From positions 1 to 64,000 of the IMG/VR virus record IMGVR_UViG_3300047095_000752: a stretch of 64,000 bases of DNA, one strand, 5' to 3'. The position numbers and the translations under genes are program-made. Within the stretch, counting starts at the first letter, position 1. Every line of letters starts with the position of its first letter. The notes beneath the pieces are model-generated. The model ran no database searches. It saw nothing but the letters and a program-made list of their open reading frames with translations, and was not told where the DNA came from. Of this stretch, positions 1,937-63,029 are shown piece after piece.

Positions 1937-3101
1937 TTCTTTTCATAATCTTGAATGTTTCTTCACCTACCGTGTGATCGGTTCGATTACGGTCGTTGAG
2001 TTTACACGTATCTTCATTTAAAATTATAAATGTACATCCTATAGTTACATCTCGATATCTATTCTTCAAATAATTTAAAATGACTCTTCTATTATCTTTT
2101 TTAAGGTTAGTATTACAAACTGCTATTTTATTCCTAAACCCATTTATACTTATTTCGTTATTTATATCTTCAATTAGTAATTGCTCTAATGGTGTATTTT
2201 TCGACAGGCAGTACTCAAATGCTTGTTTGGCGACCTCTTTAGGGTCGTTGAGTATAACTCTTGAGTTTAAATCTGATGATAAATTGTCTTTGAATACTCG
2301 CTCCCGAATTATATCGAATGAAAATATTTTACGGTCAGCCTGAGTTGCTCGGAAATCCTTACCAGATCCGGGTAGACCACAGTAGAACATGATATCTACA
2401 TCGTCCGACGTCAGATTACTTTTAGTATATTTACGTCCGGTGAAATTTATATTAACAACATGTTTAGATTTATGGGAATCGGAGTCTTTGGAAGCTACAC
2501 TTCCCAACTCATCAATTTCTTTGAATAATTTGAATTTATTGTATAGGGAACTCTCATACCTAACCATCTTAGCCAACTTATCGGGTATATTAATTAGATC
2601 GTAGAACACCATATGATTTGACACTAAATCACAAACGTCAACTATAATAGAAGATTGTTTATCGGTATCAACACAGAATTCAGCCAACACATCATACACA
2701 ACATTTGAGGCGTGTTTTGTACTCATAAATGCATGGTTATAGAATGTAACTTTATTATCATCTTTTATTTTTCTGGTAAATACTTTTCCGTAATCGTGAG
2801 TTAAAATTGCAACAGTCATTGTCATCAAATCTTCAACGGATTCAATCTTGATTGTGTTATAACTAAGGTATGCTTTATACGCCCCTAGCATGGCGGTGAC
2901 ATGTGCCCATACATCACCCTCACCGTGCCATGGGTTGTGGTTCACTATAGTTTGACCATCGTATAAATGATGTGAAGTGACTCTCATTTCTTGAACTTCG
3001 GATTCATATTTTTTGCAATAAAAAGAAATTATTTTATTCATATATTTTATGTTTTGTGCGTTTGATGTTGCCACGAAAAACTCCTTAAAGGTTGGATACA
3101 C
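1869..3101 (-). CDS. HD-Pnk-like RNA end-healing enzyme (HD phosphoesterase plus P-loop kinase)
   Basis: HGEGDVWAH...HDYGK...H...HM HD motifs, followed by Walker A GLPGSGKD, a SFDIIR motif and an NTN..K..R kinase-type motif. Confidence 0.8.
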   Translation of the reverse strand: MYPTFKEFFVATSNAQNIKYMNKIISFYCKKYESEVQEMRVTSHHLYDGQTIVNHNPWHGEGDVWAHVTAMLGAYKAYLSYNTIKIESVEDLMTMTVAILTHDYGKVFTRKIKDDNKVTFYNHAFMSTKHASNVVYDVLAEFCVDTDKQSSIIVDVCDLVSNHMVFYDLINIPDKLAKMVRYESSLYNKFKLFKEIDELGSVASKDSDSHKSKHVVNINFTGRKYTKSNLTSDDVDIMFYCGLPGSGKDFRATQADRKIFSFDIIRERVFKDNLSSDLNSRVILNDPKEVAKQAFEYCLSKNTPLEQLLIEDINNEISINGFRNKIAVCNTNLKKDNRRVILNYLKNRYRDVTIGCTFIILNEDTCKLNDRNRTDHTVGEETFKIMKRIEIPTYNENFDGIWFKTSYDAV

Positions 3102-3119
3102 TATTCAATATATATAATG

Positions 3120-4433
3120 CTAATGAGATTCCGTTTGTTCACCAGATCGAATTATGTAAAATACTGATATCAATTTAAATATTTTTCGCATCAAATGTGT
3201 CTTATTGGTTACTGGATCTATATGTTCATATAAGTCATTTTCCAAAGAGCGAACCACAATTCCTTCCCGACCTTTGAATTGATTCTTGTTCAACATACTA
3301 TGGTGCACTAAGGTGGTCGGACCATCTACATATTCTTCAAGGACACCTTCGTAGTACGGACCTTTATATAGACACTTCACACATGGTAAATTAAATGCTT
3401 TTGTATACGATTCTAATATATCGATGTGTTGATATTTACCATTAATTGTAATATCGAAGAATTTATATTCTTTAGCTGTACAACCATAATTCATATCTTG
3501 AACGCCGTTACCATATATTTCACCATATAGAACAATGTCATCACCCCCAGATCCGCCATGTCCCTGTGATATAGATTCTGCGAATCCCCTATTATTATTC
3601 CTAAGATTATACAATAGATCTTTAACTCGTGAATCTAATATCGGTAGTAAATATAGATCGACGTATGGTGTTTCGGCTATGTTAAAAATAGTATTGAAAT
3701 AGGGCACATTATTATATAGAGAATTTATAATTTTACTTTTCCAGCAGTTATTAAATATATTGGTATGGTATTTGAATAAGGTTTTCTTTTTAAATTTTAC
3801 ACTGAATTCTCTAACAATCTTTAACTGAGTGGTATGACTTCCTGCAACAAATTCAAATTTACCTTTAGGGTTCTTAACATACCCCGCCCGGAAGTTTGTA
3901 CCGTGTATTTTCTCAGTTATATAAATCGTTTCACCTCCACTAAAAGCTCCGGGATAATTTCTATAATTTTCAATACCAGTGTAATTCGTGAACGTACCAT
4001 ATTGATTTACGATATACACATTAGAGTCGTACCCAGCAGTTTCATAATTATATGCGTTATAATATTTAGTTTTATCATCACCTACCTTGTCACCGGCTTC
4101 AATGTGTATGGCAAATCCAAAACTGGGTTCCGCCCTTATATTCGCCGCCATTATTCTAACGTGTGTATCAGCCATAACATGCCCCGAAGGGAGTGTCCCA
4201 CAATATTTGGTTATCTCCCATTTATCCGTCCATTCTCTTGGGACTAGACTGTTCGGTGGGAAATATATAATTGGATCATTTACTTTATACTTACCTTTTG
4301 GTACAATTACCCACCACCCATTGATTCGGATCTTCTCTAATAAATCCGCATTTGGGTGTTTTTGTACATCTGATATAGTTTCTACTTTTACAGCAAAAGT
4401 TGACATGAAGTTCCTTTCTTTACCGATATCCAT
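3120..4433 (-). CDS. RNA ligase, DRB0094/Rnl5 family (start probably near 4406)
   Basis: N-terminal HPNADLLE OB-type module, motif I TEKIHGTN, YGEIYG, FFDI, EGIVVR and the C-terminal KIFK. Confidence 0.88.
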   Translation of the reverse strand: MDIGKERNFMSTFAVKVETISDVQKHPNADLLEKIRINGWWVIVPKGKYKVNDPIIYFPPNSLVPREWTDKWEITKYCGTLPSGHVMADTHVRIMAANIRAEPSFGFAIHIEAGDKVGDDKTKYYNAYNYETAGYDSNVYIVNQYGTFTNYTGIENYRNYPGAFSGGETIYITEKIHGTNFRAGYVKNPKGKFEFVAGSHTTQLKIVREFSVKFKKKTLFKYHTNIFNNCWKSKIINSLYNNVPYFNTIFNIAETPYVDLYLLPILDSRVKDLLYNLRNNNRGFAESISQGHGGSGGDDIVLYGEIYGNGVQDMNYGCTAKEYKFFDITINGKYQHIDILESYTKAFNLPCVKCLYKGPYYEGVLEEYVDGPTTLVHHSMLNKNQFKGREGIVVRSLENDLYEHIDPVTNKTHLMRKIFKLISVFYIIRSGEQTESH

Positions 4434-4731
4434 GATTTTGAGTATAAATTTGAGCTACACTTTTCCGGCGAGTATATAACACTTGTGCAATCGGACCTGC
4501 TATATTAGCACTATATGTAACCCCGAGTATTATACTACGAGTGAAATAATTTAATTTTAAAAAACTTAATGTAAATATACGATTTTTATATTTTCGGCGA
4601 CTATTACATCTTGATGTTATACACATATCATTTTTAGATTTTGTTATAACTTTAGACATGAGAAATATTAATTTACGAATTGAACTCAAACATAAGTTTT
4701 TGTCAACCTGCGATAAAATGGATTTATTCAT
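4420..4731 (-). CDS. Small hypothetical protein
   Basis: 103 aa ORF with a GGAG-type RBS upstream. Confidence 0.45.
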   Translation of the reverse strand: MNKSILSQVDKNLCLSSIRKLIFLMSKVITKSKNDMCITSRCNSRRKYKNRIFTLSFLKLNYFTRSIILGVTYSANIAGPIAQVLYTRRKSVAQIYTQNHGYR

Positions 4732-4742
4732 GAGTTCTCCTA

Positions 4743-4774
4743 TGGGCGCGGATCTAATATTGATCCGCGCCCAT
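4743..4774. terminator. GC-rich hairpin after the Hen1-ligase gene
   Basis: Inverted repeat atgggcgcggatc-taatatt-gatccgcgcccat. Confidence 0.5.
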
Positions 4775-4783
4775 CTATTTATA

Positions 4784-6988
4784 TTACAACGTTTTATCGA
4801 CTACACCAACAGAACTCATTCCGAGAAATGCAGCCACATACTTGAGTCTAGTCTCATGCCGATTATTCAAGAATGCATCTAATATTATTTTAGAGCATTC
4901 AAATTCTTGAATAGCAAGTCCACGCTTTTTAGCGACTTGGCGATGTGTTATATTTTTGAAATATTCTTCATTTTCATATAGAGGGAGTCCGTAAGTCAAA
5001 TTTAAATACTTATGTCCCCGGACTTTAAGAGCGGGTTGGATATAATATCCGGATGGTAATACACTTGAAAAATTATTCAATGGTTTATATACAAACCCTT
5101 CGAGTAAAGGTAGATCTGGATATGTATTGAAGGTAAGAGTTTCAGAAGGAGAACTACCGCAACGAGAGAGCCAGTCCAGTGTATTGTTTGCCATATCGTG
5201 TTCATCCGTTATAACGGTATATTTGCATGGCTTTAGTATTTTACAATCATCTGATATGATATCTATGTATTTCATCATATCCAAATTAGACATTGTATAA
5301 CCGTGTATAAGAGATCTTTTATGCTTGGTACCGATAGCAAGTACATGAAATGGTCGAATTTCAATATCAGTTTCTTTAGTAAATTCGTTGAGTGTATTCA
5401 ACACGGTCTCAACATACGCCGTATCCTTACCAGAATGTATATTGGATAGATATTGGGATTCGATTGCTGCGTAGAATTGCTCGTTAAGCATTGTTTTTGC
5501 AGCGTACGACCAAGGTAGAAGCTCAGCATCCAGAATAATAAAGGACACTTCCATCCCGATTTTTTCTTCAAGGGCGCTTATATTTTTTGATATTTCTGAA
5601 TGTAGGACGAGCTTTATATTTTGTTCATCTTCATTCTTGAAAAATTCAAATCCACCACGAGAATTTATTATAAGGGTTTTATCGTACCCTTTTTCTTGAG
5701 CAGCTTCAAAATTCTTAAACCACAATATTTGAGTTCGAGAACCCATATACTTAGTCTGTTGAATTAATTTAGTTACGCCACGCTCTCTGTAGTATTTAAA
5801 CGCACCCAGAGGATGTTCAATATAAGAGTCGAATTGTCCGTATAAAGTTCTATAATAGTCGAGTTTATTTTCTGGAAGTAGATGCTCCTTAAGAGTCTCA
5901 ACCGGAGACACTGTAGGTGCCATGTAAAATATATTCTTCGAGTTACTTATGAATGCACGTGACGTATACCCACGCCCAATTTCCTTCTGAGATACAGAGT
6001 AATCAGACACAGGGAGGTATATGTTACCTTGCATTTTATTCAAATTTTTAAGAGATTTAAAGTCGATCTGTCGTTCAATTTTATTTTTTCGAGGTTTTCT
6101 ATAATCGGTTGTGTCAAGAGTCCATTCGAGAATTCGCTCAGGACTCCATTCGGTTGGATCAACTTGTATTGAAAATATCCTATCTTCAACTTCACCTTCT
6201 TTTGGCGGATATGGTTTTGATATTGTTATCTTGTTATCTATAAGAGATTTATGTGTAGCGAATATACAGAAGGAGGGCTGCATATTCTCAAATTCTTCAG
6301 TCGGTTCTATTATATCAATATATTCAATATTGTATAAGTCGGATAGATAACTAACCACTTCGCGGCTAAATTGGTCTTTTGTGTATTCGACGCAATGGTC
6401 TCGCCGACGGAGGCTACCCGGCTCTATCGAATAGAATTTATTGAATTCAATATTAGGGGTAGTTAGATATAAATACTTCGGTACAAATATGTTTTTAATT
6501 AAATCTAAAATTTTAATACGATCACCATATTCAAAGTGCTCAATAGCTTCCACACAAGTCAATAGATCGGGGAGACAATCGCTTATAGTTATATTTGGGT
6601 ATAGTATATTACTTTCAATTACACGAACTTTATCAGTTGTTTTTATCTTTTTTATTTTATAAAAATCCTTTTCAATTCCAAGGATTCTAAGTTTCGGATG
6701 TTCTTTTACCAACATCTCCAACAGTTTACCTTCGGAAGTACACAGGTCCACCATGTACTCAATTTCAGGCATATCATTGAGTTTATTACATATCAATTCA
6801 TGTCTTTTCTGATGTAACGATATCTTCTTATCAACCAGTTCAGCTACAGATACTGGTGGGGTATATCCAAATTCTTGCTTAAATTTTTGCTTTAATGTTT
6901 TGTTATCTTGACAGAATTTGTTCATAATCATAGAGAAGTTTTTAGAATATCTTCTAACCGTAGTTGAATCGTTATCCGACATCTTCAT
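4784..6988 (-). CDS. Fusion of Hen1 RNA 2'-O-methyltransferase domain and Pnkp adenylyltransferase (RNA ligase) domain
   Basis: Hen1 MTase motifs DLCTSEG, VEAIEH, TTPNIEFN and RRDHCVEYT. Pnkp-ligase motifs YMAPTVSP, IEHP..AF.YY, KYMGSR, LDAELLPW, EGFVYKP, QPALKVRG..YL..TYG, KR.LA..EF and terminal DKTL. Confidence 0.85.
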   Translation of the reverse strand: MKMSDNDSTTVRRYSKNFSMIMNKFCQDNKTLKQKFKQEFGYTPPVSVAELVDKKISLHQKRHELICNKLNDMPEIEYMVDLCTSEGKLLEMLVKEHPKLRILGIEKDFYKIKKIKTTDKVRVIESNILYPNITISDCLPDLLTCVEAIEHFEYGDRIKILDLIKNIFVPKYLYLTTPNIEFNKFYSIEPGSLRRRDHCVEYTKDQFSREVVSYLSDLYNIEYIDIIEPTEEFENMQPSFCIFATHKSLIDNKITISKPYPPKEGEVEDRIFSIQVDPTEWSPERILEWTLDTTDYRKPRKNKIERQIDFKSLKNLNKMQGNIYLPVSDYSVSQKEIGRGYTSRAFISNSKNIFYMAPTVSPVETLKEHLLPENKLDYYRTLYGQFDSYIEHPLGAFKYYRERGVTKLIQQTKYMGSRTQILWFKNFEAAQEKGYDKTLIINSRGGFEFFKNEDEQNIKLVLHSEISKNISALEEKIGMEVSFIILDAELLPWSYAAKTMLNEQFYAAIESQYLSNIHSGKDTAYVETVLNTLNEFTKETDIEIRPFHVLAIGTKHKRSLIHGYTMSNLDMMKYIDIISDDCKILKPCKYTVITDEHDMANNTLDWLSRCGSSPSETLTFNTYPDLPLLEGFVYKPLNNFSSVLPSGYYIQPALKVRGHKYLNLTYGLPLYENEEYFKNITHRQVAKKRGLAIQEFECSKIILDAFLNNRHETRLKYVAAFLGMSSVGVVDKTL

Positions 6989-7610
6989 TTCCTTCGTCGA
7001 GCCAAGTTTTAGAGATTGTAATTAATTTATCAACAAATGCTTCATGTGCTGTATATATTCCACCGCGCCGGATAGTCAAAAATAACGATAATACATATGC
7101 CTTCTGTATGAATTCCGATGTCGTCATAGCTTCTTTTGGATTTAATTTCAACATAAAGCACGAACGCATTTCAATCGTCGATTCAACACTTGATGCATTA
7201 ATGTTGTAATCATCAAATAGCTTTACCGAGAATTCTAAGTCGTTCACAATCGGACCAATTATTATTTCTTGATTTTGCGTTTTTTGAAAAAATTGTTCGT
7301 CGGTTATATCACCTTTCGGTGGTCGTCCCGCGATGCAAGACCGTAGGGTTTCCCATAGTGCTTTTAGATGATACGGACATGCTGCAGCAACTTCTGAATT
7401 CAAATAGAAATCTAAATTCAATTGTCGTGCAACTTTTAAGAATTGCATATCATCTAATTCGGTTTTAATTTCATATTGCGTATCTACCCCGTTGACGAAT
7501 TGACCCGTGAATTTAAGTCCACGCAGGTCCTGTTCAAATGGGGGAGAATTTGGATTCTTAACTAATATATAAGATAAATGTGGTATATCACTTTTTATTG
7601 AAAAATACAT
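6972..7610 (-). CDS. Hen1 N-terminal (ligase-activating, Hen1_L-like) domain
   Basis: LSYILVKNP resembles DLGYLLHKHP; AYVL...VDKL....WL matches the end of the Hen1 N-domain; it lies directly upstream of the Hen1 MTase. Confidence 0.72.
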   Translation of the reverse strand: MYFSIKSDIPHLSYILVKNPNSPPFEQDLRGLKFTGQFVNGVDTQYEIKTELDDMQFLKVARQLNLDFYLNSEVAAACPYHLKALWETLRSCIAGRPPKGDITDEQFFQKTQNQEIIIGPIVNDLEFSVKLFDDYNINASSVESTIEMRSCFMLKLNPKEAMTTSEFIQKAYVLSLFLTIRRGGIYTAHEAFVDKLITISKTWLDEGNEDVG

Positions 7611-7611
7611 A

Positions 7612-9603
7612 TCAACCCTTTCCTATTCGTTCCAAAAATTCATCTTCAGATATAATTGTAATACCCTTAGATGCGGCTTTGGCTAACTTTGCCCCGGCAT
7701 TCTCACCGACTACAAGAAGAGTAGTCTTTGACGTTACCGATTTATCAACTTTACCACCGTTCTCCAAAATGAGTTCGTGGATACGGGGGCGGGGAGTGAA
7801 CAAGACCCCTGTCACACAAACCAGTTCACCAGCGAAGGCGTCCGATTTTGCTACAGTATTCATAGTCTCATTTTCATCAACTTTCATGTTAAATCCATAA
7901 GATACAAGATCTAATATAAGCTTTTCATTTTTATATTCTCTAAACCAATTATAAATACTATTTGCAACAACATCACCAATTCCATCTATAGACTTTAAAT
8001 CTTCTACTTTCTGAGATCTTAATGTTTGAATATCCTTGAATGTATTTGCAAGAAGAGAAGATGTTGTTTTACCAGTATTGGGAATTTGTAACCCAGCTAA
8101 TACTTTTTCAAATGGCATATTTTTTGATTTTTGAATGCTATTATATATATTTTTAGAAGACTTTTCAGCCATACCGTCGAGTTGGCAAATATCATCCGGT
8201 GTCATATCATATAGATCTATTATGTTATGAATCATATTTGCATCATACATTTTATCAACTATAGCGTCACCAAGACCATCAATGTCCATCACATCTTTGG
8301 ATGCCCAGTATAACACTTTACCTACGATTTTTCCAAGACAATCTGGATTCTGACATATAAGAGCTACATTATCATTATCATTAGCAACATCAAAACAACA
8401 TACCGGACATAATTCTGGTCGTTCAAATTTTTCCAAATTTTTCCCAATACGATTTTCCATGTTAACATATAATATCTGAGGGATAATTTCACCGGCTTTT
8501 TTAATACCGACAATATCTCCGATTCTTATATCCAGTTTCTCTACTTGATCAAAATTGTGGAGAGAAGCCTTAGCTACAACGGATCCACATATCTCAACAG
8601 GTTCAAGTATAGCTACCGGAGTCAGTGCGCCGGACTTACCAACCTGAACATCTATGTTCAATACTTTAGTTTCTTCAATTTCTTCTGCATATTTATAAGC
8701 GACTAACCATTTCGGGTGACTTGATGTATCTTTGAATTTAGAGCGACTTGCTATATCATTTATCTTAACGACAACACCATCAACCGGGTACGGAAGTGTA
8801 GTTTTATTTGCACCAAATTTATCAATAACAGATTTTAAGTTATCACCACCATTTACAATTTCATACTCGGGAGTCTTAAACCCAAGATCTTTTATTGTGC
8901 TTAATACTTGAAATTGATTTGTTAAGCCATGTTGTAACGGATCAACGATATCATATGCTATCATTGATAATTTACTTTGTTTCGATATTTTTGAATCTTT
9001 TCTTTTCAATGCTCCGGCGGCTGCATTTCTTGGATTTGCTAATAATTGTTCACCATTCAATTTTTTGTTACGATTTAATCCTTCAAATACTTTAAATGAC
9101 ATATATACTTCACCACGAATTTCAACGATATTATTCATACTATTAGGAATACTTAATGGAACTCCATTAATAACTTTTACATTTTCAATAACATTTTCAC
9201 CGATAGTTCCATTACCCCGAGTGAGAGCTTTAGTCAAAATTGAATTTTCATATATCAATGATATAGCCAACCCATCGATTTTATACTCAACCGAATATTC
9301 ATCTGATACTAATTTTGATTTTTTAGTAAATGAGTCCAATTCTTTAACCGAATATACCTTTTCTATACTCATCATCTTTTTAGAATGTTTTATTTTTTCG
9401 AATTCACTTACAGGGTCAGAGCCAATTCGTTGGGATGGAGAATCTGATATATAAGCACTGGGGTTATTTCTCTCATATTCAAGTAATTGATTGAACTTTT
9501 TATCATATTCTTCATCTGATATAATTGGATTAGAATCGTTATAGTATAAACAACTGTGTTTGTTCAACTCACTCTTAAGACTGCAGTACTCTTGGTTTGT
9601 CAT
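7612..9603 (-). CDS. ligA: NAD-dependent DNA ligase
   Basis: YY..SNP.ISDEEYD, KIDG adenylation motif, TRGNG, EIRGE, NPRNAAAG, C4 zinc finger, HhH repeats and BRCT domain. Start moved to MTNQEY at 9603. Confidence 0.96.
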   Translation of the reverse strand: MTNQEYCSLKSELNKHSCLYYNDSNPIISDEEYDKKFNQLLEYERNNPSAYISDSPSQRIGSDPVSEFEKIKHSKKMMSIEKVYSVKELDSFTKKSKLVSDEYSVEYKIDGLAISLIYENSILTKALTRGNGTIGENVIENVKVINGVPLSIPNSMNNIVEIRGEVYMSFKVFEGLNRNKKLNGEQLLANPRNAAAGALKRKDSKISKQSKLSMIAYDIVDPLQHGLTNQFQVLSTIKDLGFKTPEYEIVNGGDNLKSVIDKFGANKTTLPYPVDGVVVKINDIASRSKFKDTSSHPKWLVAYKYAEEIEETKVLNIDVQVGKSGALTPVAILEPVEICGSVVAKASLHNFDQVEKLDIRIGDIVGIKKAGEIIPQILYVNMENRIGKNLEKFERPELCPVCCFDVANDNDNVALICQNPDCLGKIVGKVLYWASKDVMDIDGLGDAIVDKMYDANMIHNIIDLYDMTPDDICQLDGMAEKSSKNIYNSIQKSKNMPFEKVLAGLQIPNTGKTTSSLLANTFKDIQTLRSQKVEDLKSIDGIGDVVANSIYNWFREYKNEKLILDLVSYGFNMKVDENETMNTVAKSDAFAGELVCVTGVLFTPRPRIHELILENGGKVDKSVTSKTTLLVVGENAGAKLAKAASKGITIISEDEFLERIGKG

Positions 9604-9626
9604 ACATTTTTTCCTTAAAAAAATAA

Positions 9627-9660
9627 GGAGGGAGTAATAGCAAAATGCTATCACTCCCTC
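9627..9660 (-). terminator. Hairpin terminator downstream of the GC-rich gene
   Basis: gagggagtaatagca-aaa-tgctatcactccctc with an A-run on its left (U-tract on the minus strand). Confidence 0.55.
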
Positions 9661-9738
9661 TATATCACAGGGGATGCTGCTGATGTTTATATTTTGTTTT
9701 TATTTTTGGGATATATGTATCAAAGACTGTATGGGATG

Positions 9739-10773
9739 TCAGTCTTCGGCATTCAACTTTTTATGTTGCCCGATCTTGGGGACGTTGAAACCCAAGTCGG
9801 TCAGGAGGGCACCCATCGCGGAGTGTCCCTCGTAGCGAGATGCACCCTTCGCGACCGCGCCCTCATCCATGCGGGTCGCAATCATGCGACGCCACACGGC
9901 GAACATCGCAGCCAGTTGCTGCGACTGGGCGGTGACAAATACCCCGGTGTCCACCACAATGCTGGTGGTGTGGTGGTAATTGCCCTCCAGCCATGGACGC
10001 GAACGCCATGCGTTGGGATCGAGATCCCAGCCGCAGTTACTGTACATGGCGGGCACGTACCCTGCCGCCTTCATGAACGCATCCGAGCCGTGCTGCTCGT
10101 ATGCCTTCAAGACCCAACCCGCGTGACCGGAGATGACAGACATCTCCTCAACATGGTGAGCCATGTTGCGGTGGTCATTGAACGACTTCATGATGTTGAG
10201 GCGTTCCTTCCAGTTCGCCTTGATGGCGACTTGGTACGTGCAGTGCGCTGCACAGCGCACTCGGAAGGACATGACCTGCCCATCCGCGCTGAACTCTCCC
10301 CGCATGATGGGGGAAGACAACGTCCGCTGGGCGTTGTCCGGTTTCGTGTAGACCACACGCATCTGCTGCTGCAGATGCCCCGCACCGGCGGGGATGGACT
10401 CGGGAAAGCGAGACCGGTGCGGATCAAGCTGCCACCCGTTCGCTTCCACGAACTCGTGGAGCTTCCTGTCGTATTGACACGACAGCAACTCCGCCGGGAT
10501 GATGGGGTAGTTCTTCAGAACCACCTCTTCCGCCACAGCGTTGAACTCTTTCTTGGTCAGCTTGTACTGACCATCACTGTTGTGCGCCACCTTTCGAATG
10601 GCATGGCTGGACACCGGGTCCAACGCCACGTTGTCGAAGGCGAGCACCGTATCCGACAACGGGCTGAACGTCAGTCCGTGGTGGGCGATGTCTGCTTCGG
10701 GCGTGTTGTTGATTGCGTCCATCAGATTGTTGAATTGCATGCTTAACATCTCCTGTAAAGATTTTACCGACAC
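9739..10773 (-). CDS. GC-rich hypothetical protein, probable early gene
   Basis: 344 aa ORF; a sampled 60-nt line is 62% GC against about 25% in flanking genes; motif A promoter directly upstream. Confidence 0.75.
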   Translation of the reverse strand: MSVKSLQEMLSMQFNNLMDAINNTPEADIAHHGLTFSPLSDTVLAFDNVALDPVSSHAIRKVAHNSDGQYKLTKKEFNAVAEEVVLKNYPIIPAELLSCQYDRKLHEFVEANGWQLDPHRSRFPESIPAGAGHLQQQMRVVYTKPDNAQRTLSSPIMRGEFSADGQVMSFRVRCAAHCTYQVAIKANWKERLNIMKSFNDHRNMAHHVEEMSVISGHAGWVLKAYEQHGSDAFMKAAGYVPAMYSNCGWDLDPNAWRSRPWLEGNYHHTTSIVVDTGVFVTAQSQQLAAMFAVWRRMIATRMDEGAVAKGASRYEGHSAMGALLTDLGFNVPKIGQHKKLNAED

Positions 10774-10821: not shown

Positions 10822-10845
10822 AGAATCAAAAATACTATATATATT

Positions 10846-11229
10846 TTAAAAAGATAATTTCAAAATCTCATCCAAACTTAACTTCGAGAAGTCATCCAGT
10901 GTTGGAATTTTAATCTTAGTTTCACTTTTCGAATTATATTCATTTGCAATTTGACTCAATTCATTATGTTTTAATCCAATCTGTGCTATATATTGTTGCT
11001 GTATTTTTATATTAGTTTCGGACTTATACGATTCCATAAGACTTTTTAATTCGGAGCATGATTGTGTATACGTATTTATAATACCATTTAATTCTAAAGA
11101 CACATGACCTTTATCAGTTGGAGTTGGAGTGTCTGAATGATATACGTAATAAAATACACCCAATCCAATTATAAGTATAACCAATACAATATTTACACGG
11201 ACAGATCTACTTTGCAAGAACTTACGCAT
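10846..11229 (-). CDS. Membrane-anchored hypothetical protein
   Basis: N-terminal TM helix VNIVLVILIIGLGVFYYVY followed by coiled coil. Confidence 0.65.
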   Translation of the reverse strand: MRKFLQSRSVRVNIVLVILIIGLGVFYYVYHSDTPTPTDKGHVSLELNGIINTYTQSCSELKSLMESYKSETNIKIQQQYIAQIGLKHNELSQIANEYNSKSETKIKIPTLDDFSKLSLDEILKLSF

Positions 11230-12408: not shown

Positions 12409-12424
12409 TCTATGATTCTCCTCG

Positions 12425-12454
12425 AAAAAAAGCGCCCTCGGAATTGAGGGCGCT
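12425..12454 (-). terminator. Rho-independent terminator
   Basis: aaaaaa-agcgccctc-ggaatt-gagggcgct. Confidence 0.75.
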
Positions 12455-12465
12455 ACGGCTGGTGG

Positions 12466-12579: not shown

Positions 12580-12603
12580 TTTCAATCTCCTACGAGTTTG
12601 AAT

Positions 12604-12746: not shown

Positions 12747-12805
12747 TCAAATTCATGCTCTGGTGGATTATCCAGTTGGACCGGAGTTAGTACATAGTCC
12801 AGATT

Positions 12806-40584: not shown

Positions 40585-40615
40585 AATCTCTTTTTAAAAT
40601 ATATATAGTCAACTT

Positions 40616-51247: not shown

Positions 51248-54200
51248 TCAGTCCTCTAATTCAAGTCCAATTGTTTTAAACATCGCATTCAGGAGGCTCA
51301 ATGTGCGGGGTTTATCCGGCGCATCGTTCTCAAGAAGGATCTCTTCGTTTTGAAGGATATCTGATAATACTCGGAGCTTCTTTCCGGGCGAATCCGAATG
51401 CGTCGTCAGAAATTCCTCAATTGTGATCTCAGCGCCCTGTGCGCACAATGCCCAGATTTCCATTTCGCCAAGTTTGTGCCCACCAGATAATTTCTTACCA
51501 CCAACCGGTTGGAGTGTTGTATTGACGTATGGTCCAACGGATCGACTGATAATTTTATCTTCACTGCGGTGGATCAGCTTCTGAAAATATATTGATCCAA
51601 CAGCAATTGGATTCTTAAAGCATTTTTTATCGTCTATATACAAGGACTGTTTATATTCAGATCCGGTTAACTTCATGATCTGATCCAATTGTTGTGGAGT
51701 TATGCTGTTAAATGGAGGCTGCACAATCTGTATATCATCCAGAGCTTCGCAGATATCCTTCTCATAGAGAATGTTTTGAAAACGTTTGTAGGTTGTAGCT
51801 GCATAAATCTTATCGTCTGAGTTATCAAACAATTCTAAAAACTTTTGTAACTTCTTGTTCGCTTTATCGGAAAGTTTTCCATTCTTGTGATGATCAGACA
51901 TAAGATAAGTTTTCATATTATACAAGGCTTCGGTGGAATGTAGCTCGTATAACTGCCCACAGTTCATGCGGCTGATAATACCAAGGGGATTCACAATGAT
52001 CTCAACGTGACGACCGTCCGCCAGTTGAGGCATCTGATCCTTTGGGATGATCTTGGATATAATTCCTTTTGCCCCATGCCTGTTCGATACTTTATCCCCA
52101 ACAGAGATCTTAGATTTATGGATCCCTTTTAGGATGATCTTGATCCCTTCGATGTTCTTGCCCTTCTCGCTGTATTTAGCCGATTTCTTTGGGGGCGGTG
52201 CGTCGCTTACATGTAACTTGGACAATTCATAAAAATCAAGAATATTATCAATCTTTTCATTACTCATATATTCGGACAGTTGCTTACGAATTTCATTTAA
52301 CCGACCATTCTGATTTTTGATCAAAGTTTTAATGAAATTATGGAACTGAGGAATTTGTTTGTTCCAAGTATTAGGGTAAAGTTCAATACTAGTTATTTCA
52401 CAATCAATCGGAATTACCATATTATTTGGTTCGGTATTTATACTTTCAATACCGTCATGTCCGATATGCTTTAATTTAGCGTAAATCTCACCCTTTTTTA
52501 GCTTATCTCCAACCGAAGGTAAAGGCTTATAAGAATCATCGAGTAAACTTAGAAGGATCTGACCACCTTCAATTTCAAATGATAATTCTACAGTGTGTAA
52601 CGATGTGTAACGATCCACCACATCTTCTGAAATGACGATACCATCCTCGTAATTATAACCTTCCCAGATCGCGACCGCTGTCGTCAGATTATGCCCCAAT
52701 GTCAAATCGCCATCTTTGAAAAATTTGGAAATAGCAATAACATCATCTTTCTCGAATTTATCACCAACTTGCAAATCAGAATACATATAATCAGCACTAT
52801 TCAAATACATTGGACGATATGACAGCTTAAAAATATCAATATTACCAGACTCGTATTTAATAACAATGAATTCGTGAGATTTATAGGCGACCTCACCATC
52901 TTCCTTGGCAATTTGCTTGAAAGATGTATATTCAAAATATTTATCTTCCCAACCAGTTTTGATGAATGGCTTCGTTGCATTTTCAAGTAAAATTGACTGT
53001 TTCATCTGACCTGATGCCATTTGAAGTCTGGTTTGATCGTTGTTACTTAAAAATGGAACTAAGGTTATAGGATGACTACAGACCATATCCAAATCAGACT
53101 CCGTCATGCGCCCAGTCTCATCAATTTTAGCGCCGGGACAGAAATTTAAAATAACACCACAACCATCTCGATCTGGGGTGTCAGCAGGGCAGAAGATCCC
53201 ATAATGTGATGGATCCAAGTTCTTTAGGTGGCTTGGAGTTTTGCTCTTAGTGAAACTTCCGGGTCCAATAATTGTACTCTGTGTTAATGCTGAGATTTCG
53301 CCAAGTGGATTATAAGGGAAATTATGGTGAATGATTGAACTTACATTACAAGAGTCGAGAAGTATAGTAGTCGGAATTTTGAACTTAACACGCTTATTAT
53401 CATTGAGGATACAGATCATATCAAATACAGATCGGATTAAATTATATAAGACATACTCGGAAAACCGAATTCTTTTATTTTCTAAGGATGTATCAGACTT
53501 TGTACCCTCACTCAGAGAATATAGTAACTCCAGAACTGGAGAATTGGTTTTCATGTATGATTTGGAGAATGTATCAATCTCAACTGAATTTGAGATCGCA
53601 AAAAGAATTGATCTTCCCTTCTTGAGATTATCTGTGATCGCCACATTACTAGTACGGTAAGCTCCGAGTAATTCGATCAGTTTGGATTCTTTATTACCCT
53701 TCCAGAGTGTATTACACCGAGCTACTAACTGCTCGATAGCGGGGTTCTCGTTTGGAAGAGAATCTACGAAGGTTTGAAATTCTTCTCGCTTATACATCGC
53801 ACAAATGATATTTTCAATAGGAATATCTTTATAAAATTTCATATGGTTGAGAAAGATCTTGACAAGAAACGAATCGTCTTTATCAATTCCAGCACGCATG
53901 GAGATTACATTATTCTTGAAATTAAGAATCGTTTTATTCCGAACCACACGGTGAATGACAGGTTCGTCGATTAGCTGGAATACAGGGACTTTTAGTAGAC
54001 CGCCAATATAAAAGAATTGATCTTGGAGGAGTTCTGGTACTTGGATCGTATATACATGTTCTTTTTTAATAGTTTTCTTTTGAGTCAATTCATTTACATG
54101 GATCTTTAAAGTACGATAAATGCTCTTTTTAATTTCTTCCTTGCGCTTGCGCTTATTCTTCGCCCATGTGATTTTTACGAATTTCCAATTTTCTAAGAGA

Positions 54201-54286
54201 TCAATGTTTTGGAATAATCCTCCGATTGCGCCCTTGACTCGATCATAGTCCCATTCGTAACTTCTCTGCTCAAATGTAGTTTTCAT
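51248..54286 (-). CDS. rpoB: Phage DNA-directed RNA polymerase beta subunit
   Basis: CPADTPD, GQMKQS, GYNYEDGI, GDKVSNRHGAKG, SRMNCGQ, KLIH and GGHKLGEME. Confidence 0.93.
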   Translation of the reverse strand: MKTTFEQRSYEWDYDRVKGAIGGLFQNIDLLENWKFVKITWAKNKRKRKEEIKKSIYRTLKIHVNELTQKKTIKKEHVYTIQVPELLQDQFFYIGGLLKVPVFQLIDEPVIHRVVRNKTILNFKNNVISMRAGIDKDDSFLVKIFLNHMKFYKDIPIENIICAMYKREEFQTFVDSLPNENPAIEQLVARCNTLWKGNKESKLIELLGAYRTSNVAITDNLKKGRSILFAISNSVEIDTFSKSYMKTNSPVLELLYSLSEGTKSDTSLENKRIRFSEYVLYNLIRSVFDMICILNDNKRVKFKIPTTILLDSCNVSSIIHHNFPYNPLGEISALTQSTIIGPGSFTKSKTPSHLKNLDPSHYGIFCPADTPDRDGCGVILNFCPGAKIDETGRMTESDLDMVCSHPITLVPFLSNNDQTRLQMASGQMKQSILLENATKPFIKTGWEDKYFEYTSFKQIAKEDGEVAYKSHEFIVIKYESGNIDIFKLSYRPMYLNSADYMYSDLQVGDKFEKDDVIAISKFFKDGDLTLGHNLTTAVAIWEGYNYEDGIVISEDVVDRYTSLHTVELSFEIEGGQILLSLLDDSYKPLPSVGDKLKKGEIYAKLKHIGHDGIESINTEPNNMVIPIDCEITSIELYPNTWNKQIPQFHNFIKTLIKNQNGRLNEIRKQLSEYMSNEKIDNILDFYELSKLHVSDAPPPKKSAKYSEKGKNIEGIKIILKGIHKSKISVGDKVSNRHGAKGIISKIIPKDQMPQLADGRHVEIIVNPLGIISRMNCGQLYELHSTEALYNMKTYLMSDHHKNGKLSDKANKKLQKFLELFDNSDDKIYAATTYKRFQNILYEKDICEALDDIQIVQPPFNSITPQQLDQIMKLTGSEYKQSLYIDDKKCFKNPIAVGSIYFQKLIHRSEDKIISRSVGPYVNTTLQPVGGKKLSGGHKLGEMEIWALCAQGAEITIEEFLTTHSDSPGKKLRVLSDILQNEEILLENDAPDKPRTLSLLNAMFKTIGLELED

Positions 54287-54325
54287 ATTGATATATTTCC
54301 TCGTGTGCTAAGATGAGTGATTATA

Positions 54326-55270
54326 TCAAATAGTATGGTAAACTGTCAATTTTTCGTTGAACCAAGCCATGAATTCTTCTTGGATGTATTTTCCGCCTTT
54401 AGATCCATTTTCTTTTTGAGGTATTATTCTTAAGTTTTCCCGGAGGTTACATATTTCTTTAACAATTGTTTGCCCGTAGATATTATCAAGATCATTATCG
54501 ATAAAAGCTATTCTCGGATAAATATGATCTACCGTATAATCAGATTTATTCCATCGATTTCCCGTTGCCTTGGCTGTTTTTTGTGATTGGGTATAATCCG
54601 TGTATTTTGGATCATCCGATAAAATGTAAAGTTTTTTAAGATCAAACCTTAAATATCCAGCCCTAGCCAGACGTGTTCTATCTTGTTGGAATCTAAAATG
54701 GTTTTTACCGGTATTTTTTTTATATCCACATTCTCTACATCGTTGATCATTTTGAAAATTATTATATGTTATTAAACTTTCCTCCCCACACTCACATCTA
54801 TATTTCATTTTAGTATGATTATTAATGTACTTAGTTTCTAAAAGTTCACAACCTTCATTTTTAAAGATCTTATATACAGTTTCATATGTTAACTTTTCTT
54901 TACCCGAACATTTTCTACACCGTTGTTCCAAATGTTTAAAATTACTATATTCTATCACGCTTATGTTATCACATGAACATCTATACCTCATTTTAGTATG
55001 GGCATTTATATACTCTGTTTCTAGTAGTTCGCAGCCTTTGTCTTTAAAAGAATTGTAAACATCTTCAAATTTAAGTTTTTCAGATCCGCCACATTTAGCG
55101 CATCTTCGATTGTGACTTTTAAAATTATTAAATATTATTTCACTTTTATTACCACATGAACACTGATACCTCATTTTAGTTGCATTATTAATATATTCAG
55201 TTTCTAATAATTCGCAGCCTTGTTCTTTGAAATAATTATAAACAACATCATATGTTAATTTAACCGGCAT
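54326..55270 (-). mobile_element. Zn-repeat HNH endonuclease
   Basis: Paralogue of 50336-51244; three repeats plus YTVDHIYP...NLR...N..K. Confidence 0.75.
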
Positions 55271-57993: not shown

Positions 57994-58053
57994 TAGAGAA
58001 TTCTCCTAAGAATATATATAAATTATACCACCTTCTACCGTTAGATTTCAATA

Positions 58054-58781: not shown

Positions 58782-59417
58782 CTACGAGACCTCCTCACCG
58801 TTTATAAACATATTTGAATAACTAGACGAATCCCACCATTTCATATCAAATAACTTTATTTCTTTATATTTTTTAATATATTTTGTTGTACTTTTCATAT
58901 TTTTTGATGTAAATATATGTTCATGTATTCTATTTTTCGAAAAATGAATTCCATAATACAACGAACCTCCATTTGATTTTACTAATTTATTTTTTTGAGG
59001 CGGAGTATTATCATTCGAATGTGTTGTATATTCACAATTAAATTCAGCATATGTTTTAATTTTAACATTTTTAATATTAGACTTTCTAATATCTATTTTA
59101 CAAAAATGAGGACCTTTATAATTATTATCGTACATCATGGTCGAAAATAGGTAGTCACTCATATCGTAACTATGTAAACCACAGTATAAAGAATAAAATC
59201 TTAACTTTATATTCAAATCTCTAACAAATGAATGCGAAAGAATTCGGTTTAACACAATCGATTTACTTTTATGTTCACCCTTAACGTATATATGTTCAAT
59301 ATAATATTTAATTGAAGGTTTTACTATCCGATTGGATATCCTATCAAAAAATCTATATAAAGCAAGTATTGTATTATCTAATTCCCATATCGTATCTTCG
59401 TTAGTTGGAAGTTGCAT
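58782..59417 (-). CDS. Hypothetical protein
   Basis: 211 aa ORF overlapping the upstream stop. Confidence 0.55.
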   Translation of the reverse strand: MQLPTNEDTIWELDNTILALYRFFDRISNRIVKPSIKYYIEHIYVKGEHKSKSIVLNRILSHSFVRDLNIKLRFYSLYCGLHSYDMSDYLFSTMMYDNNYKGPHFCKIDIRKSNIKNVKIKTYAEFNCEYTTHSNDNTPPQKNKLVKSNGGSLYYGIHFSKNRIHEHIFTSKNMKSTTKYIKKYKEIKLFDMKWWDSSSYSNMFINGEEVS

Positions 59418-60189
59418 TTAAAAGCGCCTTCAGTGATGGGTCCAGTTTATAATAATTCGTTAAATTGTATATCTTCATAGTTTCTATGACATCTTCAATT
59501 ATTTGCGAATCTATTTTTTTATGTATAAAATTCCCTATACAGTATTTATTGTTTTCATAATTTATATTTGGGTGTATGTTTTTATTTGTAAATGCTTTTA
59601 CCTCAACTAATAGATTCGAGCTATTTGTAGTAAATCTTATCTCACCCACCATAGTCCTTAATTTGACGGGTAGCCGTTTTATCATTCCAGATTCTGACTT
59701 GTACAAGTCGCATTCTATCTTATTATGTATTGTTATATTATTCCTATCAAATATAACTAAATCGTACTTGTATGAAAGTTCTTCGTTAAATGTATTATTT
59801 ACCGTTATGTTTAAAACATAATATAGATGTGTTAATATATTTCTTTTTTCGGGAATACTTATATTAATCTTACTAAACATATCTTTATAATTGTAACAAA
59901 ACTCGTCCAGTGTAGTTATCTCATTTAAAAGACTTGGGGTTATTATGATATGTTTGTTTTCTGATTTGTAAAAGATATAAAAAAAATACAAGTTATTTAA
60001 AACAATAGGGGTGATACTATATTCTTTAATTTCGGATAATATTTGATTTAAGTGTATTGTTTTATATTCGTATATTTCAATATTATGTTCTTTTTTTACA
60101 CAAATTTTATTACAGTTAAATTTATTTAAAAACGCCTTTACATTCAAGTTATTTTGTTTTGGTCTAAATAAGTTCAATAAGTTAATCAT
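59401..60189 (-). CDS. Protein with a C-terminal prokaryotic E2/UBC-like motif
   Basis: IHPNINYENNKYCIG...YN resembles the UBC HPN(x7-8)C signature. Confidence 0.45.
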   Translation of the reverse strand: MINLLNLFRPKQNNLNVKAFLNKFNCNKICVKKEHNIEIYEYKTIHLNQILSEIKEYSITPIVLNNLYFFYIFYKSENKHIIITPSLLNEITTLDEFCYNYKDMFSKINISIPEKRNILTHLYYVLNITVNNTFNEELSYKYDLVIFDRNNITIHNKIECDLYKSESGMIKRLPVKLRTMVGEIRFTTNSSNLLVEVKAFTNKNIHPNINYENNKYCIGNFIHKKIDSQIIEDVIETMKIYNLTNYYKLDPSLKALLNATSN

Positions 60190-60293: not shown

Positions 60294-60323
60294 TCCCCTA
60301 CCCCCATATAAGGGGGTAGGGGA
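60294..60323. other. Perfect 12-bp GC-rich hairpin without a U-tract
   Basis: tcccctaccccc-atataa-gggggtagggga. Confidence 0.6.
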
Positions 60324-60331: not shown

Positions 60332-60625
60332 TTAAGCTGAAATTACAATAGGAGTTATATAAATTTTAATTATAGATTCATCTTTACATACCTCATATAA
60401 TAAGGTATAGTCTAAATTATTAGTACAATATCTTTTCAATTTATTATAGAAATTTGACGGTTTAATTTTGATATAATCTTCACCACCAACTACGAATAAA
60501 TAAATTTCAAATGTTGGGTAAGTTGAAAAATACAATTCTGCTTCATTGGTGTTATGAATTTTAATGTTTGTAGTAGGATTCAATATAATATGCTCTTCCG
60601 TATTCAATACAGATTGCTTACTCAT
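60332..60625 (-). CDS. Small hypothetical protein coupled to the ThiF-like gene
   Basis: 97 aa, ATGA overlap. Confidence 0.55.
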   Translation of the reverse strand: MSKQSVLNTEEHIILNPTTNIKIHNTNEAELYFSTYPTFEIYLFVVGGEDYIKIKPSNFYNKLKRYCTNNLDYTLLYEVCKDESIIKIYITPIVISA

Positions 60626-62507: not shown

Positions 62508-62513
62508 TAACCA

Positions 62514-62906
62514 TTACGAGAATGGCTTAATGTTTGGTGAGAAGTGTTTCTTGGCGTGTAGTTCAAACGATTCAAACTTCGCCTTTGCGATATTACTTAG
62601 ATCTCTTATGCTGTCTATGTCATTTAATTCATCACTTACAAATATAATAATTTCATCTGGAATTAATTTTTGTACTTTTAATACAGCTTTACGGTATGAG
62701 TATGGATTTGGTTTAAATACCTTCCCGCCCGTATATATTTTCACTGGATATATCCCGTGTTTAAAGCACCACCACATTATTTTAAACCGTGAGAATATAG
62801 TCCTATTGGTCACCAAATAATAGTCTATATCGTACTCGTACAATATATTATTTTTTGGATCGAAATTCTTTTGCAATGTTTCGAACGATAGTATTATATT
62901 CTTCAT
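62514..62906 (-). CDS. Hypothetical protein (possibly a degenerate HAD-like fold)
   Basis: 130 aa; KPNP...IIFVSD..NDI resembles the C-terminal half of HAD proteins. Confidence 0.45.
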   Translation of the reverse strand: MKNIILSFETLQKNFDPKNNILYEYDIDYYLVTNRTIFSRFKIMWWCFKHGIYPVKIYTGGKVFKPNPYSYRKAVLKVQKLIPDEIIIFVSDELNDIDSIRDLSNIAKAKFESFELHAKKHFSPNIKPFS

Positions 62907-63009
62907 AATAATTCCAACAATAAAAATATAGGTTTCATATTATAACAACTATAGACCTTTAAGTAAAGTTGACCCCATCTTTGTAAAAAAGATGAATGAG
63001 ACTTAAGGT

Positions 63010-63029
63010 CAATAATTAATATATATAAT
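63010..63029 (-). promoter_or_regulatory. Phage promoter motif A
   Basis: caataattaatatatataat. Confidence 0.7.

What the first reader, a model, noticed from the sequence alone, without database searches (positions are those of the whole stretch)
3099..63029. Conserved 20-bp TATATATA-containing promoter motif A
Seen: plus-strand CA(A/C)TA(A/T)T(T/A/C)(A)(A/T)ATATATA(A/G)T-type copies at 3099, 10802, 12806, 15661, 16686, 17482, 23811, 45192, 49783 and 63010, with weaker ones near 530, 13515, 40595 and 58010. All have the same orientation and lie upstream of minus-strand non-structural genes or RNAs, with no sigma70 -35 box apparent. Inference: the recognition site for a phage-encoded RNA polymerase (early/middle class).
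Basis: partly seen in the sequence, partly recalled or inferred. Interest (0 to 1): 0.6.

Follow-up and report, generated by a model that had tools for sequence, protein, structure and literature searches.

The report
Jumbo phage early promoter motif
The repeated 20-base TATATATA-rich motif is a real promoter of an uncultivated lake-water jumbo phage that carries two RNA polymerases of its own. It looks very like the early promoters that the virion-packaged polymerase of Bacillus phage AR9 reads, so it is an expected kind of element found in a phage lineage where no promoter had been described.

Summary
The whole 245-kb virus record has about 31 copies, forming a class clearly separated by score. 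Read on the transcribed (minus) strand, the motif is AyTATATATATTaAtTATTG with sharp edges and no -35 box. It lies in intergenic DNA, co-oriented with the next gene, often just after a terminator.

Metatranscriptome contigs cover only the four stretches that run from a motif copy to the next intrinsic terminator, and none crosses a motif (permutation p about 5e-6). Relatives with only 33-45% identical polymerase proteins carry the same motif at syntenic positions.

The genome encodes two multisubunit RNA polymerases and no sigma70 region 2 was found. AR9's mapped early promoters have nearly the same architecture (AAATATATATTAT-N6-G, where G is the start site). A second motif, GGACAAAT-N3-T(A/G), precedes baseplate genes and the genes of the virion-polymerase-like set. 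Motif A heads the operon of the other polymerase set.

Best reading: early promoters read by a phage polymerase, probably the virion-type enzyme. Promoter function is well supported. The identity of the polymerase and the timing are inferred. This is a new member of a known kind.

The parts
3099..3118 (-). Motif A copy. The candidate start site is the G at 3099 on the minus strand. It lies 25 nt before the 401-aa gene 1869-3074 and 2 nt after the stop of the RNA ligase gene 3120-4433.
   Evidence: 25.5 bits
10802..10821 (-). Motif A copy heading the leftward block: ORF 9739-10773, NAD-dependent DNA ligase 7612-9654, 6972-7610, PNKP-like 4784-6988, RNA ligase 3120-4433.
   Evidence: 26.8 bits
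12806..12825 (-). Motif A copy heading a roughly 380-nt unit that ends at the intrinsic terminator 12431-12454. RNA-run contigs lie at 12461-12777.
   Evidence: 28.4 bits
15661..15680 (-). Motif A copy. An RNA-run contig lies at 15312-15581 and a terminator-like hairpin at 15371-15400. Further downstream are an RNA contig at 14862-15099 and tRNA-Arg at 14790-14866.
   Evidence: 28.9 bits
16686..16705 (-). Motif A copy heading a small unit: a 53-codon ORF at 16449-16610, then a terminator hairpin at 16386-16408 followed by a T run. RNA-run contigs lie at 16417-16631.
   Evidence: 28.0 bits
17482..17501 (-). Motif A copy heading a roughly 740-nt unit with a long leader, tRNA-Ile 16787-16862 and terminator 16744-16780. 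RNA-run contigs tile 16793-17461.
   Evidence: 26.1 bits
23811..23830 (-). Motif A copy heading ten small leftward genes (23753 down to 20542). It points away from the second-class motif at 23865-23877, which faces the baseplate operon.
   Evidence: 28.9 bits
45192..45211 (-). Motif A copy directly after the terminator hairpin 45224-45252 and 19 nt before gene 44742-45173.
   Evidence: 26.4 bits
49783..49802 (-). Motif A copy after the beta gene block. It heads 49252-49656, 48497-49228, the ATPase 47148-48497 and the DUF2201-like gene 45266-47140. A copy sits at the same syntenic place in relatives L015 and L075, and just after the beta gene in L038.
   Evidence: 26.8 bits
63010..63029 (-). 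Motif A copy with a perfect match to the consensus. It heads the leftward operon 62906 to 49822, which contains the unsplit beta' and beta genes. A weaker related site (12.8 bits, first base T) sits at the same syntenic place in relative L015.
   Evidence: 29.0 bits
55285..57993 (-). Unsplit RNAP beta' (902 aa, contains NADFDGD), set 1. Its best AR9 matches are the non-virion RNAP subunits. It lies inside the operon headed by motif A.
51248..54286 (-). Unsplit RNAP beta (1012 aa), set 1, in the same operon. An HNH endonuclease gene (54326-55270) separates it from beta'.
526..545 (-). Variant copy (ACTATATATATTTTAAnAAG type). It shares positions 1-12 and the final G with motif A but scores only 2.5 bits against it.
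40590..40609 (-). Variant copy of the same type, about 12 nt before the HNH endonuclease gene 39583-40584 (start as called by my ORF finder at 40578), which precedes the large terminase gene.
   Evidence: 7.6 bits

Best explanation
Motif A is the main early-type promoter of a freshwater jumbo phage of the mReC kind. It works on the minus strand of the window. An AT-rich block (AyTATATATATT, about -19 to -8) followed at fixed spacing by TTG is recognised by a phage-encoded multisubunit RNA polymerase. Transcription starts at or next to the final G and runs leftward into small unknown genes, tRNA and short RNA units, an RNA-repair and ligase block, and the operon that encodes the non-virion-like polymerase (set 1).

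The most likely reader is the second, virion-RNAP-like polymerase (set 2), encoded outside the window at about 77.8-80.3 kb and 121.3-124.5 kb. It would be delivered with the DNA, as in AR9 and phiKZ. Set 1 would then read the second motif, GGACAAAT-N3-T(A/G), in front of structural genes and the set 2 genes.

Shown: the motif is real, is placed like a promoter, is conserved at syntenic positions, and RNA starts just downstream of it. Inferred: the exact start site, the early timing, and which polymerase reads it.
For: 1. Statistics and discreteness of the class. Sharp 20-nt boundaries with no -35 box.
2. 28 of 32 sites touch no called gene and nearly all point the same way as the next gene. 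In most copies a GGAG-type ribosome-binding site and ATG follow roughly 20-130 nt downstream. Several copies sit right after a hairpin plus T run.
3. Contigs from two metatranscriptome runs, at least 99% identical, lie only at 12461-12777, 14862-15099, 15312-15581, 16417-16631 and 16793-17461. Four of these five blocks have their upper edge 21-80 nt downstream of a motif copy (14862-15099 lies further down the 15661 unit), none crosses a copy, and they stop at or near terminators. Flanking genes in the same 5.9 kb are silent. All four copies fit this pattern in 1 of 200,000 random placements.
4. The complete 312-kb relative G001 (beta' 37% identical) has 11 copies of AyTATATATATTAAT-N3-TG, all on one strand, most about 50-80 nt before GGAG and ATG. 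L015, L075, L038 and L086 carry copies in the neighbourhood of the RNAP genes, at clearly orthologous places in L015 and L075.
5. The genome has two RNAP sets and no sigma70 region 2.
6. Mapped AR9 early promoters read AAATATATATTAT-N6-G, where G is the start site. They do not need new protein synthesis and are assigned to the virion RNAP (PMC5312081). Many AR9 copies also end in TG. The review PMC7598289 states that every RNAP-encoding jumbo phage has such an AT-rich motif before its early operons.
7. Set 2 best matches AR9 virion subunits (2.9e-27 and 1.2e-19). Set 1 best matches non-virion subunits (4.5e-18 and 1.6e-20). The best tree groups them the same way, with support of 79/85 and 65/59.
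8. GGACAAAT-N3-TR sits directly before the set 2 beta and beta'N genes and the baseplate operon. It is absent between 44671 and 80359, so set 1 depends on motif A at 63010. This matches AR9 and phiKZ, where non-virion RNAP genes are early.
Against: - No 5' end is mapped. The RNA data are assembled contigs without strand or true ends, at low depth, from only 5.9 kb.
- The orthology of set 2 with virion RNAPs is not significant. The alternative groupings are not rejected (p-AU 0.135 and 0.278) and the backbone of the tree is unresolved.
- Packaging of set 2 in the virion is untested.
- The TT step of the AT block sits 1 nt closer to the G than in AR9.
- Near-consensus sigma70-type promoters lie directly before the beta' gene (11/12 plus TG) and the beta gene (12/12 plus TG), so the host polymerase might express set 1.
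- No homolog of AR9 gp226 or of chimallin was found.
- Many relatives lack this exact motif.
Confidence: 0.6

Rival explanations
1. Motif A is a promoter read by the set 1 (non-virion-like, unsplit) phage polymerase, making it a middle class. The first transcription after infection would be done by the host polymerase from sigma70-type promoters.
For: - Near-perfect sigma70-type promoters with a TG extension lie 29-34 nt before the start codons of the set 1 beta' and beta genes.
- 8 of 26 strong sigma70-like sites in the genome are intergenic and point the same way as the next gene, where about 2 would be expected.
- Polymerase orthology is not statistically settled.
Against: - The total count of sigma70-like sites is not above shuffles (26 versus 15-25; 87 versus 93).
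- They are not conserved before beta' in 80 relatives, whereas motif A copies are syntenic.
- Motif A matches the AR9 virion-RNAP promoter, not the non-virion one. The second motif has the architecture of AR9 non-virion promoters.
Confidence: 0.2
2. Motif A is a strong -10-only promoter for the host sigma70/sigmaA holoenzyme, as with the early promoters of T4-like phages.
For: - The block contains TATATT, about 7 nt before the final G, which is a canonical -10 to start-site distance.
- The phage has T4-like terminase and baseplate genes.
Against: - There is no -35 box and no TG at -15/-14.
- Conservation across the discriminator and the start site is rigid, which is unusual for sigma70 promoters.
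- The same 20-nt frame is kept in relatives from different samples that differ widely in G+C content.
- The phage carries two polymerases of its own.
- The motif closely matches AR9 promoters, which function without new protein synthesis and are attributed to the injected virion RNAP rather than the host polymerase.
Confidence: 0.12
3. Motif A is not a promoter. It could instead be an RNA processing or termination signal, a binding site for a regulator, or a target or relic of a mobile element.
For: - The genome is full of homing endonuclease genes (14 HNH paralogs).
- The TATATATA core is self-complementary.
Against: - Orientation is strictly tied to the downstream gene.
- The site lies after terminators and before a ribosome-binding site and start codon.
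- RNA is present only on the downstream side.
- HNH genes do not generally have the motif next to them.
Confidence: 0.04

Closest known systems
Early promoters of Bacillus phage AR9 (PBS1 group), read by its virion RNA polymerase
   Same: - A roughly 13-nt AT-rich block starting at -19 with the core TATATATTA.
- A fixed spacer, then (T)G, with G as the mapped start site in AR9.
- No -35 box.
- Some 30-40 copies per genome of about 250 kb.
- Placed before small early genes and before non-virion RNAP genes.
- The genome also has a second class of the form xACA-N6-T(A/G).

   Different: - The TT step is 1 nt closer to the G.
- The spacer is itself highly conserved here (aAtTATT).
- The polymerases are only about 26-32% identical over the matched regions.
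- The set 1 subunits are unsplit.
- There is no evidence for uracil-containing DNA.
- No gp226 homolog was found.
- The start site here is not mapped.
Early promoters of phiKZ-like nucleus-forming phages (Chimalliviridae)
   Same: - A two-polymerase strategy.
- An AT-rich motif centred near -10 before early operons, including the non-virion RNAP genes.
- The virion-type subunit gp180 is the best phiKZ match of set 2 beta'N.
   Different: - No chimallin homolog was detected.
- The terminase and baseplate genes are T4-like.
- Similarity to the phiKZ subunits is weak.
mReC, the multimeric-RNAP-encoding Caudovirales known only from metagenomes (Weinheimer and Aylward 2020)
   Same: - Unsplit beta and beta' close enough to cellular forms to hit Pfam models.
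- Terminase of family PF03237.
- A full-length beta' homolog (39% identity) lies in a contig that the paper lists as mReC.

   Different: - That paper describes no promoters and no second polymerase set.
- A Gp23-type capsid gene was not found in this 78%-complete record.
Bacterial sigma70 promoters with an extended -10 element
   Same: A TATAAT-like hexamer about 7 nt before the presumed start site.
   Different: - No -35 box and no TG extension.
- Positions from -19 to +1 are almost invariant.

Membership tests
[quoted passage not shown] | The genome encodes two multisubunit RNA polymerase sets | tested here: met
   Set 1 is in the window (beta 1012 aa, beta' 902 aa). Set 2 comprises beta 827 aa, beta'N 306 aa and beta'C 496 aa, the last carrying ADFDGD. 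G001 also has both sets.
[quoted passage not shown] | An over-represented AT-rich motif of about 10-13 nt upstream of operons, without a -35 box | tested here: met
   About 31 copies, a two-group score distribution, sharp edges and no upstream conservation.
[quoted passage not shown] | Transcription starts at a fixed distance from the motif (at the conserved G in AR9) | tested here: inconclusive
   RNA contigs begin 21-80 nt downstream of four copies and never cross them. Contigs cannot show true 5' ends.
[quoted passage not shown] | Drives early genes, including non-virion RNAP genes, while virion RNAP and structural genes use another promoter class | tested here: met
   This was met by gene arrangement only. 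Motif A heads the set 1 operon, and GGACAAAT-N3-TR precedes set 2 beta, set 2 beta'N and the baseplate operon. Timing was not measured.
[quoted passage not shown] | The cognate enzyme is orthologous to virion RNAPs and is packaged in the virion | tested here: inconclusive
   Best-hit pattern and the best tree (79/85) agree with this, but the alternatives are not rejected. Packaging cannot be tested here.
[quoted passage not shown] | Activity is independent of the host RNA polymerase and of new protein synthesis | not testable with these tools
   This needs infection experiments with rifampicin and chloramphenicol, and no cultured host or phage exists.
Bacterial sigma70-type promoter | A -35 hexamer 16-18 nt upstream of the -10 element, or a TG extension | tested here: not met
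   There is no information content upstream of position 1. Positions 4-5 are AT, not TG. None of the top listed sigma70-like hits on the transcribed strand coincides with a motif copy.
mReC clade | Beta and beta' related to those of listed mReC contigs, and a PF03237 terminase | tested here: met
   L022 is the same contig as WOR52_10000459, which is listed as mReC. Its beta' is 39% identical over residues 6-885. The terminase matches PF03237 at 23.8 bits against a cut-off of 22.
mReC clade | Major capsid protein of family PF07068 (Gp23) | tested here: inconclusive
   No match in this 78%-complete record. The search rang in none of its control genomes either, so the negative carries no weight.
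Chimalliviridae | Nuclear shell protein (chimallin) | tested here: not met
   phiKZ gp54 gives no hit better than E = 2 by blastp, phmmer or tblastn. The caveats are that these were pairwise searches only and that the genome is incomplete.

The most novel reading that the evidence does not exclude
The AR9-type two-polymerase cascade may extend to the uncultivated mReC lineage, which has T4-like morphogenesis genes, unsplit beta and beta', and no detectable phage-nucleus shell. The extension would include both promoter grammars:
- early: an AT-rich block from -19 to -7, a fixed spacer, then TG;
- late: xACA-N6-T(A/G).

That would mean the virion and non-virion polymerase pair, and their promoter specificities, are older than the split between these phage groups and have been kept while the enzymes diverged to about 25-30% identity.
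Probability: 0.4. Interest if true: 0.65.

Novelty: new member of a known kind. Interest (0 to 1): 0.42.

Why it matters
Phages of the mReC kind are known only from metagenomes, and nothing has been reported about how they are transcribed. This work adds three things.
- It defines their main promoter class, supported by RNA evidence and by synteny.
- It shows that such a genome carries a second polymerase set that resembles virion polymerases.
- It finds a second promoter class in front of structural genes.

Together these give a testable gene-expression programme for an uncultivated lineage.

The work also provides natural sequence variants of an AR9-like early promoter. How virion RNA polymerases of jumbo phages recognise promoters is still unknown, so these variants could guide biochemical work. 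On the practical side, the motif allows transcription units and early genes to be annotated in related metagenomic contigs.

Tried and rejected
- Megablast of 12 kb against deposited phages found no match.
- Rfam found only the six tRNAs and no family for the RNA-covered units.
- Aligning the four RNA-covered units showed no common family.
- PHROG scans of the first genes after motif copies, and of genes after the second motif, mostly returned nothing. Functional class therefore rests on a few annotated genes.
- Searches for sigma70 region 2, Gp23, chimallin and AR9 gp226 were all negative. These are weak negatives, because the record is 78% complete and some were pairwise searches only.
- The full position-weight matrix found the motif in only a subset of 80 relatives' loci. 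The motif is therefore a sub-clade feature, as is known for early motifs of other jumbo phages.
- GGACAAAT is not a promoter-like element in relatives. There it falls in coding sequence.
- A k-mer search of the regions after the beta gene in relatives was dominated by coding conservation.
- I tested whether the TATATATATTTTAA variant marks homing endonuclease genes. It does not.
- I tested whether the sigma70-like site before beta' is conserved in relatives. It is not.
- The beta' N-terminal tree left the deep branches unresolved.
- Full-text search for the motif string found no phage paper.
Full report
**What is in the sequence**

The window has 35.5% G+C and most of its genes lie on the minus strand. 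All are on the + strand with no mismatch, against 0.23 expected from shuffles.

The window is the first 64 kb of a 245,225-bp IMG/VR virus record, estimated 78% complete. That record has 28 copies at up to one mismatch (26 in one orientation), and the reversed control pattern has none. At up to two mismatches there are 32 copies.

Read on the strand of the downstream genes, the motif is AyTATATATATTaAtTATTG. Information content rises abruptly at position 1 and falls after the G at position 20. Nothing is conserved further upstream. Scores fall into two groups: 30 sites at 23.8 bits or more, two near 20, and the rest at 15.2 or less.

Two of them (526-545 and 40590-40609) belong to a five-copy variant that keeps positions 1-12 and the final G but has a different spacer. 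The one near 58010 overlaps a sigma70-like extended -10 site.

**Why it is a promoter**

*Position.* A simple ORF-based gene map covers 91% of the record. 28 of the 32 sites touch no called gene; three of the other four only touch a doubtful small ORF or the last base of a neighbouring gene, and one (183429) lies inside a gene. Nearly all sites point the same way as the next gene. In most copies a GGAG-type ribosome-binding site and a start codon follow roughly 20-130 nt downstream. Several copies sit immediately after a hairpin plus T run.

*RNA.* Public runs that hold this DNA come from lake water, and two freshwater metatranscriptome runs hold parts of it. I laid these on 12400-18300, which contains four copies. 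Their contigs, at least 99% identical, lie only at 12461-12777, 14862-15099, 15312-15581, 16417-16631 and 16793-17461. Four of these five blocks begin 21-80 nt downstream of a copy (12806, 15661, 16686, 17482), while 14862-15099 lies further down the 15661 unit, just upstream of tRNA-Arg. None crosses a copy. The genes between the units are silent, whereas the DNA run covers everything evenly. The lower ends of the RNA blocks lie at or near minus-strand terminators at 12431-12454, 15371-15400, 16386-16408 and 16744-16780. In 200,000 random placements of the five blocks, all four copies fitted this pattern once. Contigs give no strand and no true ends, so the start site itself is not mapped.

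*Conservation.* The beta' protein has 301 relatives in IMG/VR at 36-45% identity. One complete 312-kb relative has 11 copies of AyTATATATATTAAT-N3-TG, all on one strand, most about 50-80 nt before a ribosome-binding site and ATG. In L015 and L075 a copy lies at the same syntenic place as window copy 49783, after the beta gene and before the homolog of 48497-49228. L038 has a copy just after its beta gene, and L086 has copies flanking the RNAP genes. L015 also has a weaker related site (12.8 bits) at the place of copy 63010. Other relatives lack this exact motif.

**Which polymerase**

The window encodes an unsplit beta (1012 aa) and beta' (902 aa). The record also encodes a second set: beta of 827 aa, and beta' in two pieces of 306 and 496 aa, the latter carrying ADFDGD. 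No sigma70 region 2 was found. The complete relative also has both sets.

Compared with AR9, set 2 matches the annotated virion subunits best (2.9e-27 and 1.2e-19). Set 1 matches the non-virion subunits best (4.5e-18 and 1.6e-20). In phiKZ, set 2 beta'N matches gp180, a head protein. A tree of the beta' N-terminal region puts set 2 with the virion enzymes (79/85) and set 1 with the non-virion enzymes (65/59), and disfavours a recent duplication (p-AU 0.027). The swapped groupings are not rejected.

**Comparison with what is known**

In AR9, 41 mapped early start sites follow AAATATATATTAT-N6-G, with G as the start. These transcripts appear without new protein synthesis and are assigned to the injected virion polymerase. 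AR9's late promoters read AACA-N6-T(A/G) (PMC5312081). A review states that every RNAP-encoding jumbo phage has a conserved AT-rich motif centred near -10 before its early operons (PMC7598289). In phiKZ the early promoters drive the non-virion polymerase genes (PMC13282480).

The motif here shares the 5' boundary at -19, the core TATATATTA and the terminal TG. The TT step is one nucleotide closer to the G.

A k-mer search of the remaining upstream regions found a second motif, GGACAAAT-N3-T(A/G). It has 19 intergenic, co-oriented copies, mostly 17-76 nt before start codons (one, 19580, at 140 nt). These precede the baseplate operon (copy 23866), genes in the structural block (37760, 44671), and the set 2 beta and beta'N genes (80359, 124516). 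None lies between 44671 and 80359, so set 1 sits in the unit headed by motif A at 63010. This arrangement mirrors AR9 and phiKZ. The second motif is not found as a promoter-like element in relatives.

**Lineage**

The terminase is T4-like (PF03237) and its nearest deposited relatives are distant. One beta' relative (L022) is a contig listed as mReC by Weinheimer and Aylward (PMC7481178). That paper reports no promoters and no second polymerase set. I found no paper on promoters of this group. No chimallin homolog was detected.

**What weakens the preferred model**

- Near-consensus sigma70-type promoters with a TG extension lie right before the beta' gene (58022-58051) and the beta gene (54320-54349). 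Eight of 26 strong sigma70-like sites in the genome are intergenic and co-oriented. The host polymerase may therefore contribute. These sites are not conserved in relatives.
- Timing, the start site and packaging of set 2 remain inferred.

**Verdict**

The motif is a promoter with high confidence. It is probably read by a phage polymerase, most likely the virion-type one, as an early class. It is a new member of a known kind, found in a lineage where transcription signals had not been described.

Noticed in passing
window 19579-19591(+), 23865-23877(+), 37755-37767(-), 44666-44678(-); outside the window at about 80359 and 124516 of the record: A second promoter-like motif, GGACAAAT-N3-T(A/G). 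It has 19 intergenic, co-oriented copies, mostly 17-76 nt before start codons. These include the baseplate operon and both genes of the virion-RNAP-like set. Its architecture resembles the AR9 late promoter AACA-N6-T(A/G). At four strand-switch regions it points away from a motif A copy, and once (about 152.3 kb) it sits in tandem with one.
   Followed up: partly
window 54320-54349(-) and 58022-58051(-): Sigma70-type promoters with a TG extension (12/12 and 11/12 consensus matches) lie 34 and 29 nt before the start codons of the beta and beta' genes. They are not conserved before beta' in 80 relatives. The host polymerase might express the phage polymerase from them.
   Followed up: partly
window 526-545(-), 10834-10853(+), 40590-40609(-); record at about 116474 and 211184: A five-copy variant, ACTATATATATTTTAAnAAGAG, conserved over about 22 nt. 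It shares the AT block and the G with motif A but has a different spacer. One copy precedes an HNH endonuclease gene plus the large terminase gene. One copy points into an oppositely oriented gene.
   Followed up: partly
record at about 85472, 207095 and 219846 (outside the window): Three motif A copies share a different 3' half (AGAAGTG followed by TAAA), which suggests a sub-class. The copy at 219846 points against the neighbouring + strand genes.
   Followed up: no
window 39583-40584, 50336-51244, 54326-55270; 11 more in the record: There are fourteen paralogous HNH homing endonuclease genes. One is inserted between beta' and beta, one after beta, and one before the terminase gene. Closest relative L015 has beta' and beta adjacent with no insert.
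   Followed up: partly
record 121344-124499 (L198:1344-4499): The virion-like beta' is in two pieces (306 and 496 aa) with two small ORFs (108 and 120 aa) between them. The complete relative G001 has it in one 782-aa frame. The split here looks recent and may be caused by an insertion.
   Followed up: no
window 12431-12806(-): A transcribed unit of about 380 nt between motif A and a strong terminator, with no convincing ORF and no Rfam match. Its folding z-score is -2.1. It is a possible phage non-coding RNA.
   Followed up: partly
window 16449-16610(-): A 53-codon ORF for a highly charged small protein forms its own unit of promoter, ORF and terminator, and is covered by RNA contigs.
   Followed up: no
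window 13572-16862(-): Six tRNA genes, including two tRNA-Ile(UAU) and one (13864-13938) to which ARAGORN assigns no amino acid because of an odd anticodon loop. The tRNA-Ile at 16787-16862 has a leader about 620 nt long, from the motif A copy at 17482.
   Followed up: no
window 9694-10773: Two ORFs of about 344-350 aa overlap almost completely on opposite strands (9694-10746 on + and 9739-10773 on -). The motif copy at 10802 favours the minus-strand one. Neither has a family match.
   Followed up: no
window 3120-9654(-): An early-type block encodes an RNA ligase, a PNKP-like ligase-domain protein and an NAD-dependent DNA ligase. It is a likely RNA/tRNA repair and nick-sealing module.
   Followed up: no
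window 60294-60323: A strong 12-bp G+C-rich hairpin with no T run lies inside the set 1 operon, between genes 60332-60625 and 59401-60189. Its role is unknown.
   Followed up: no
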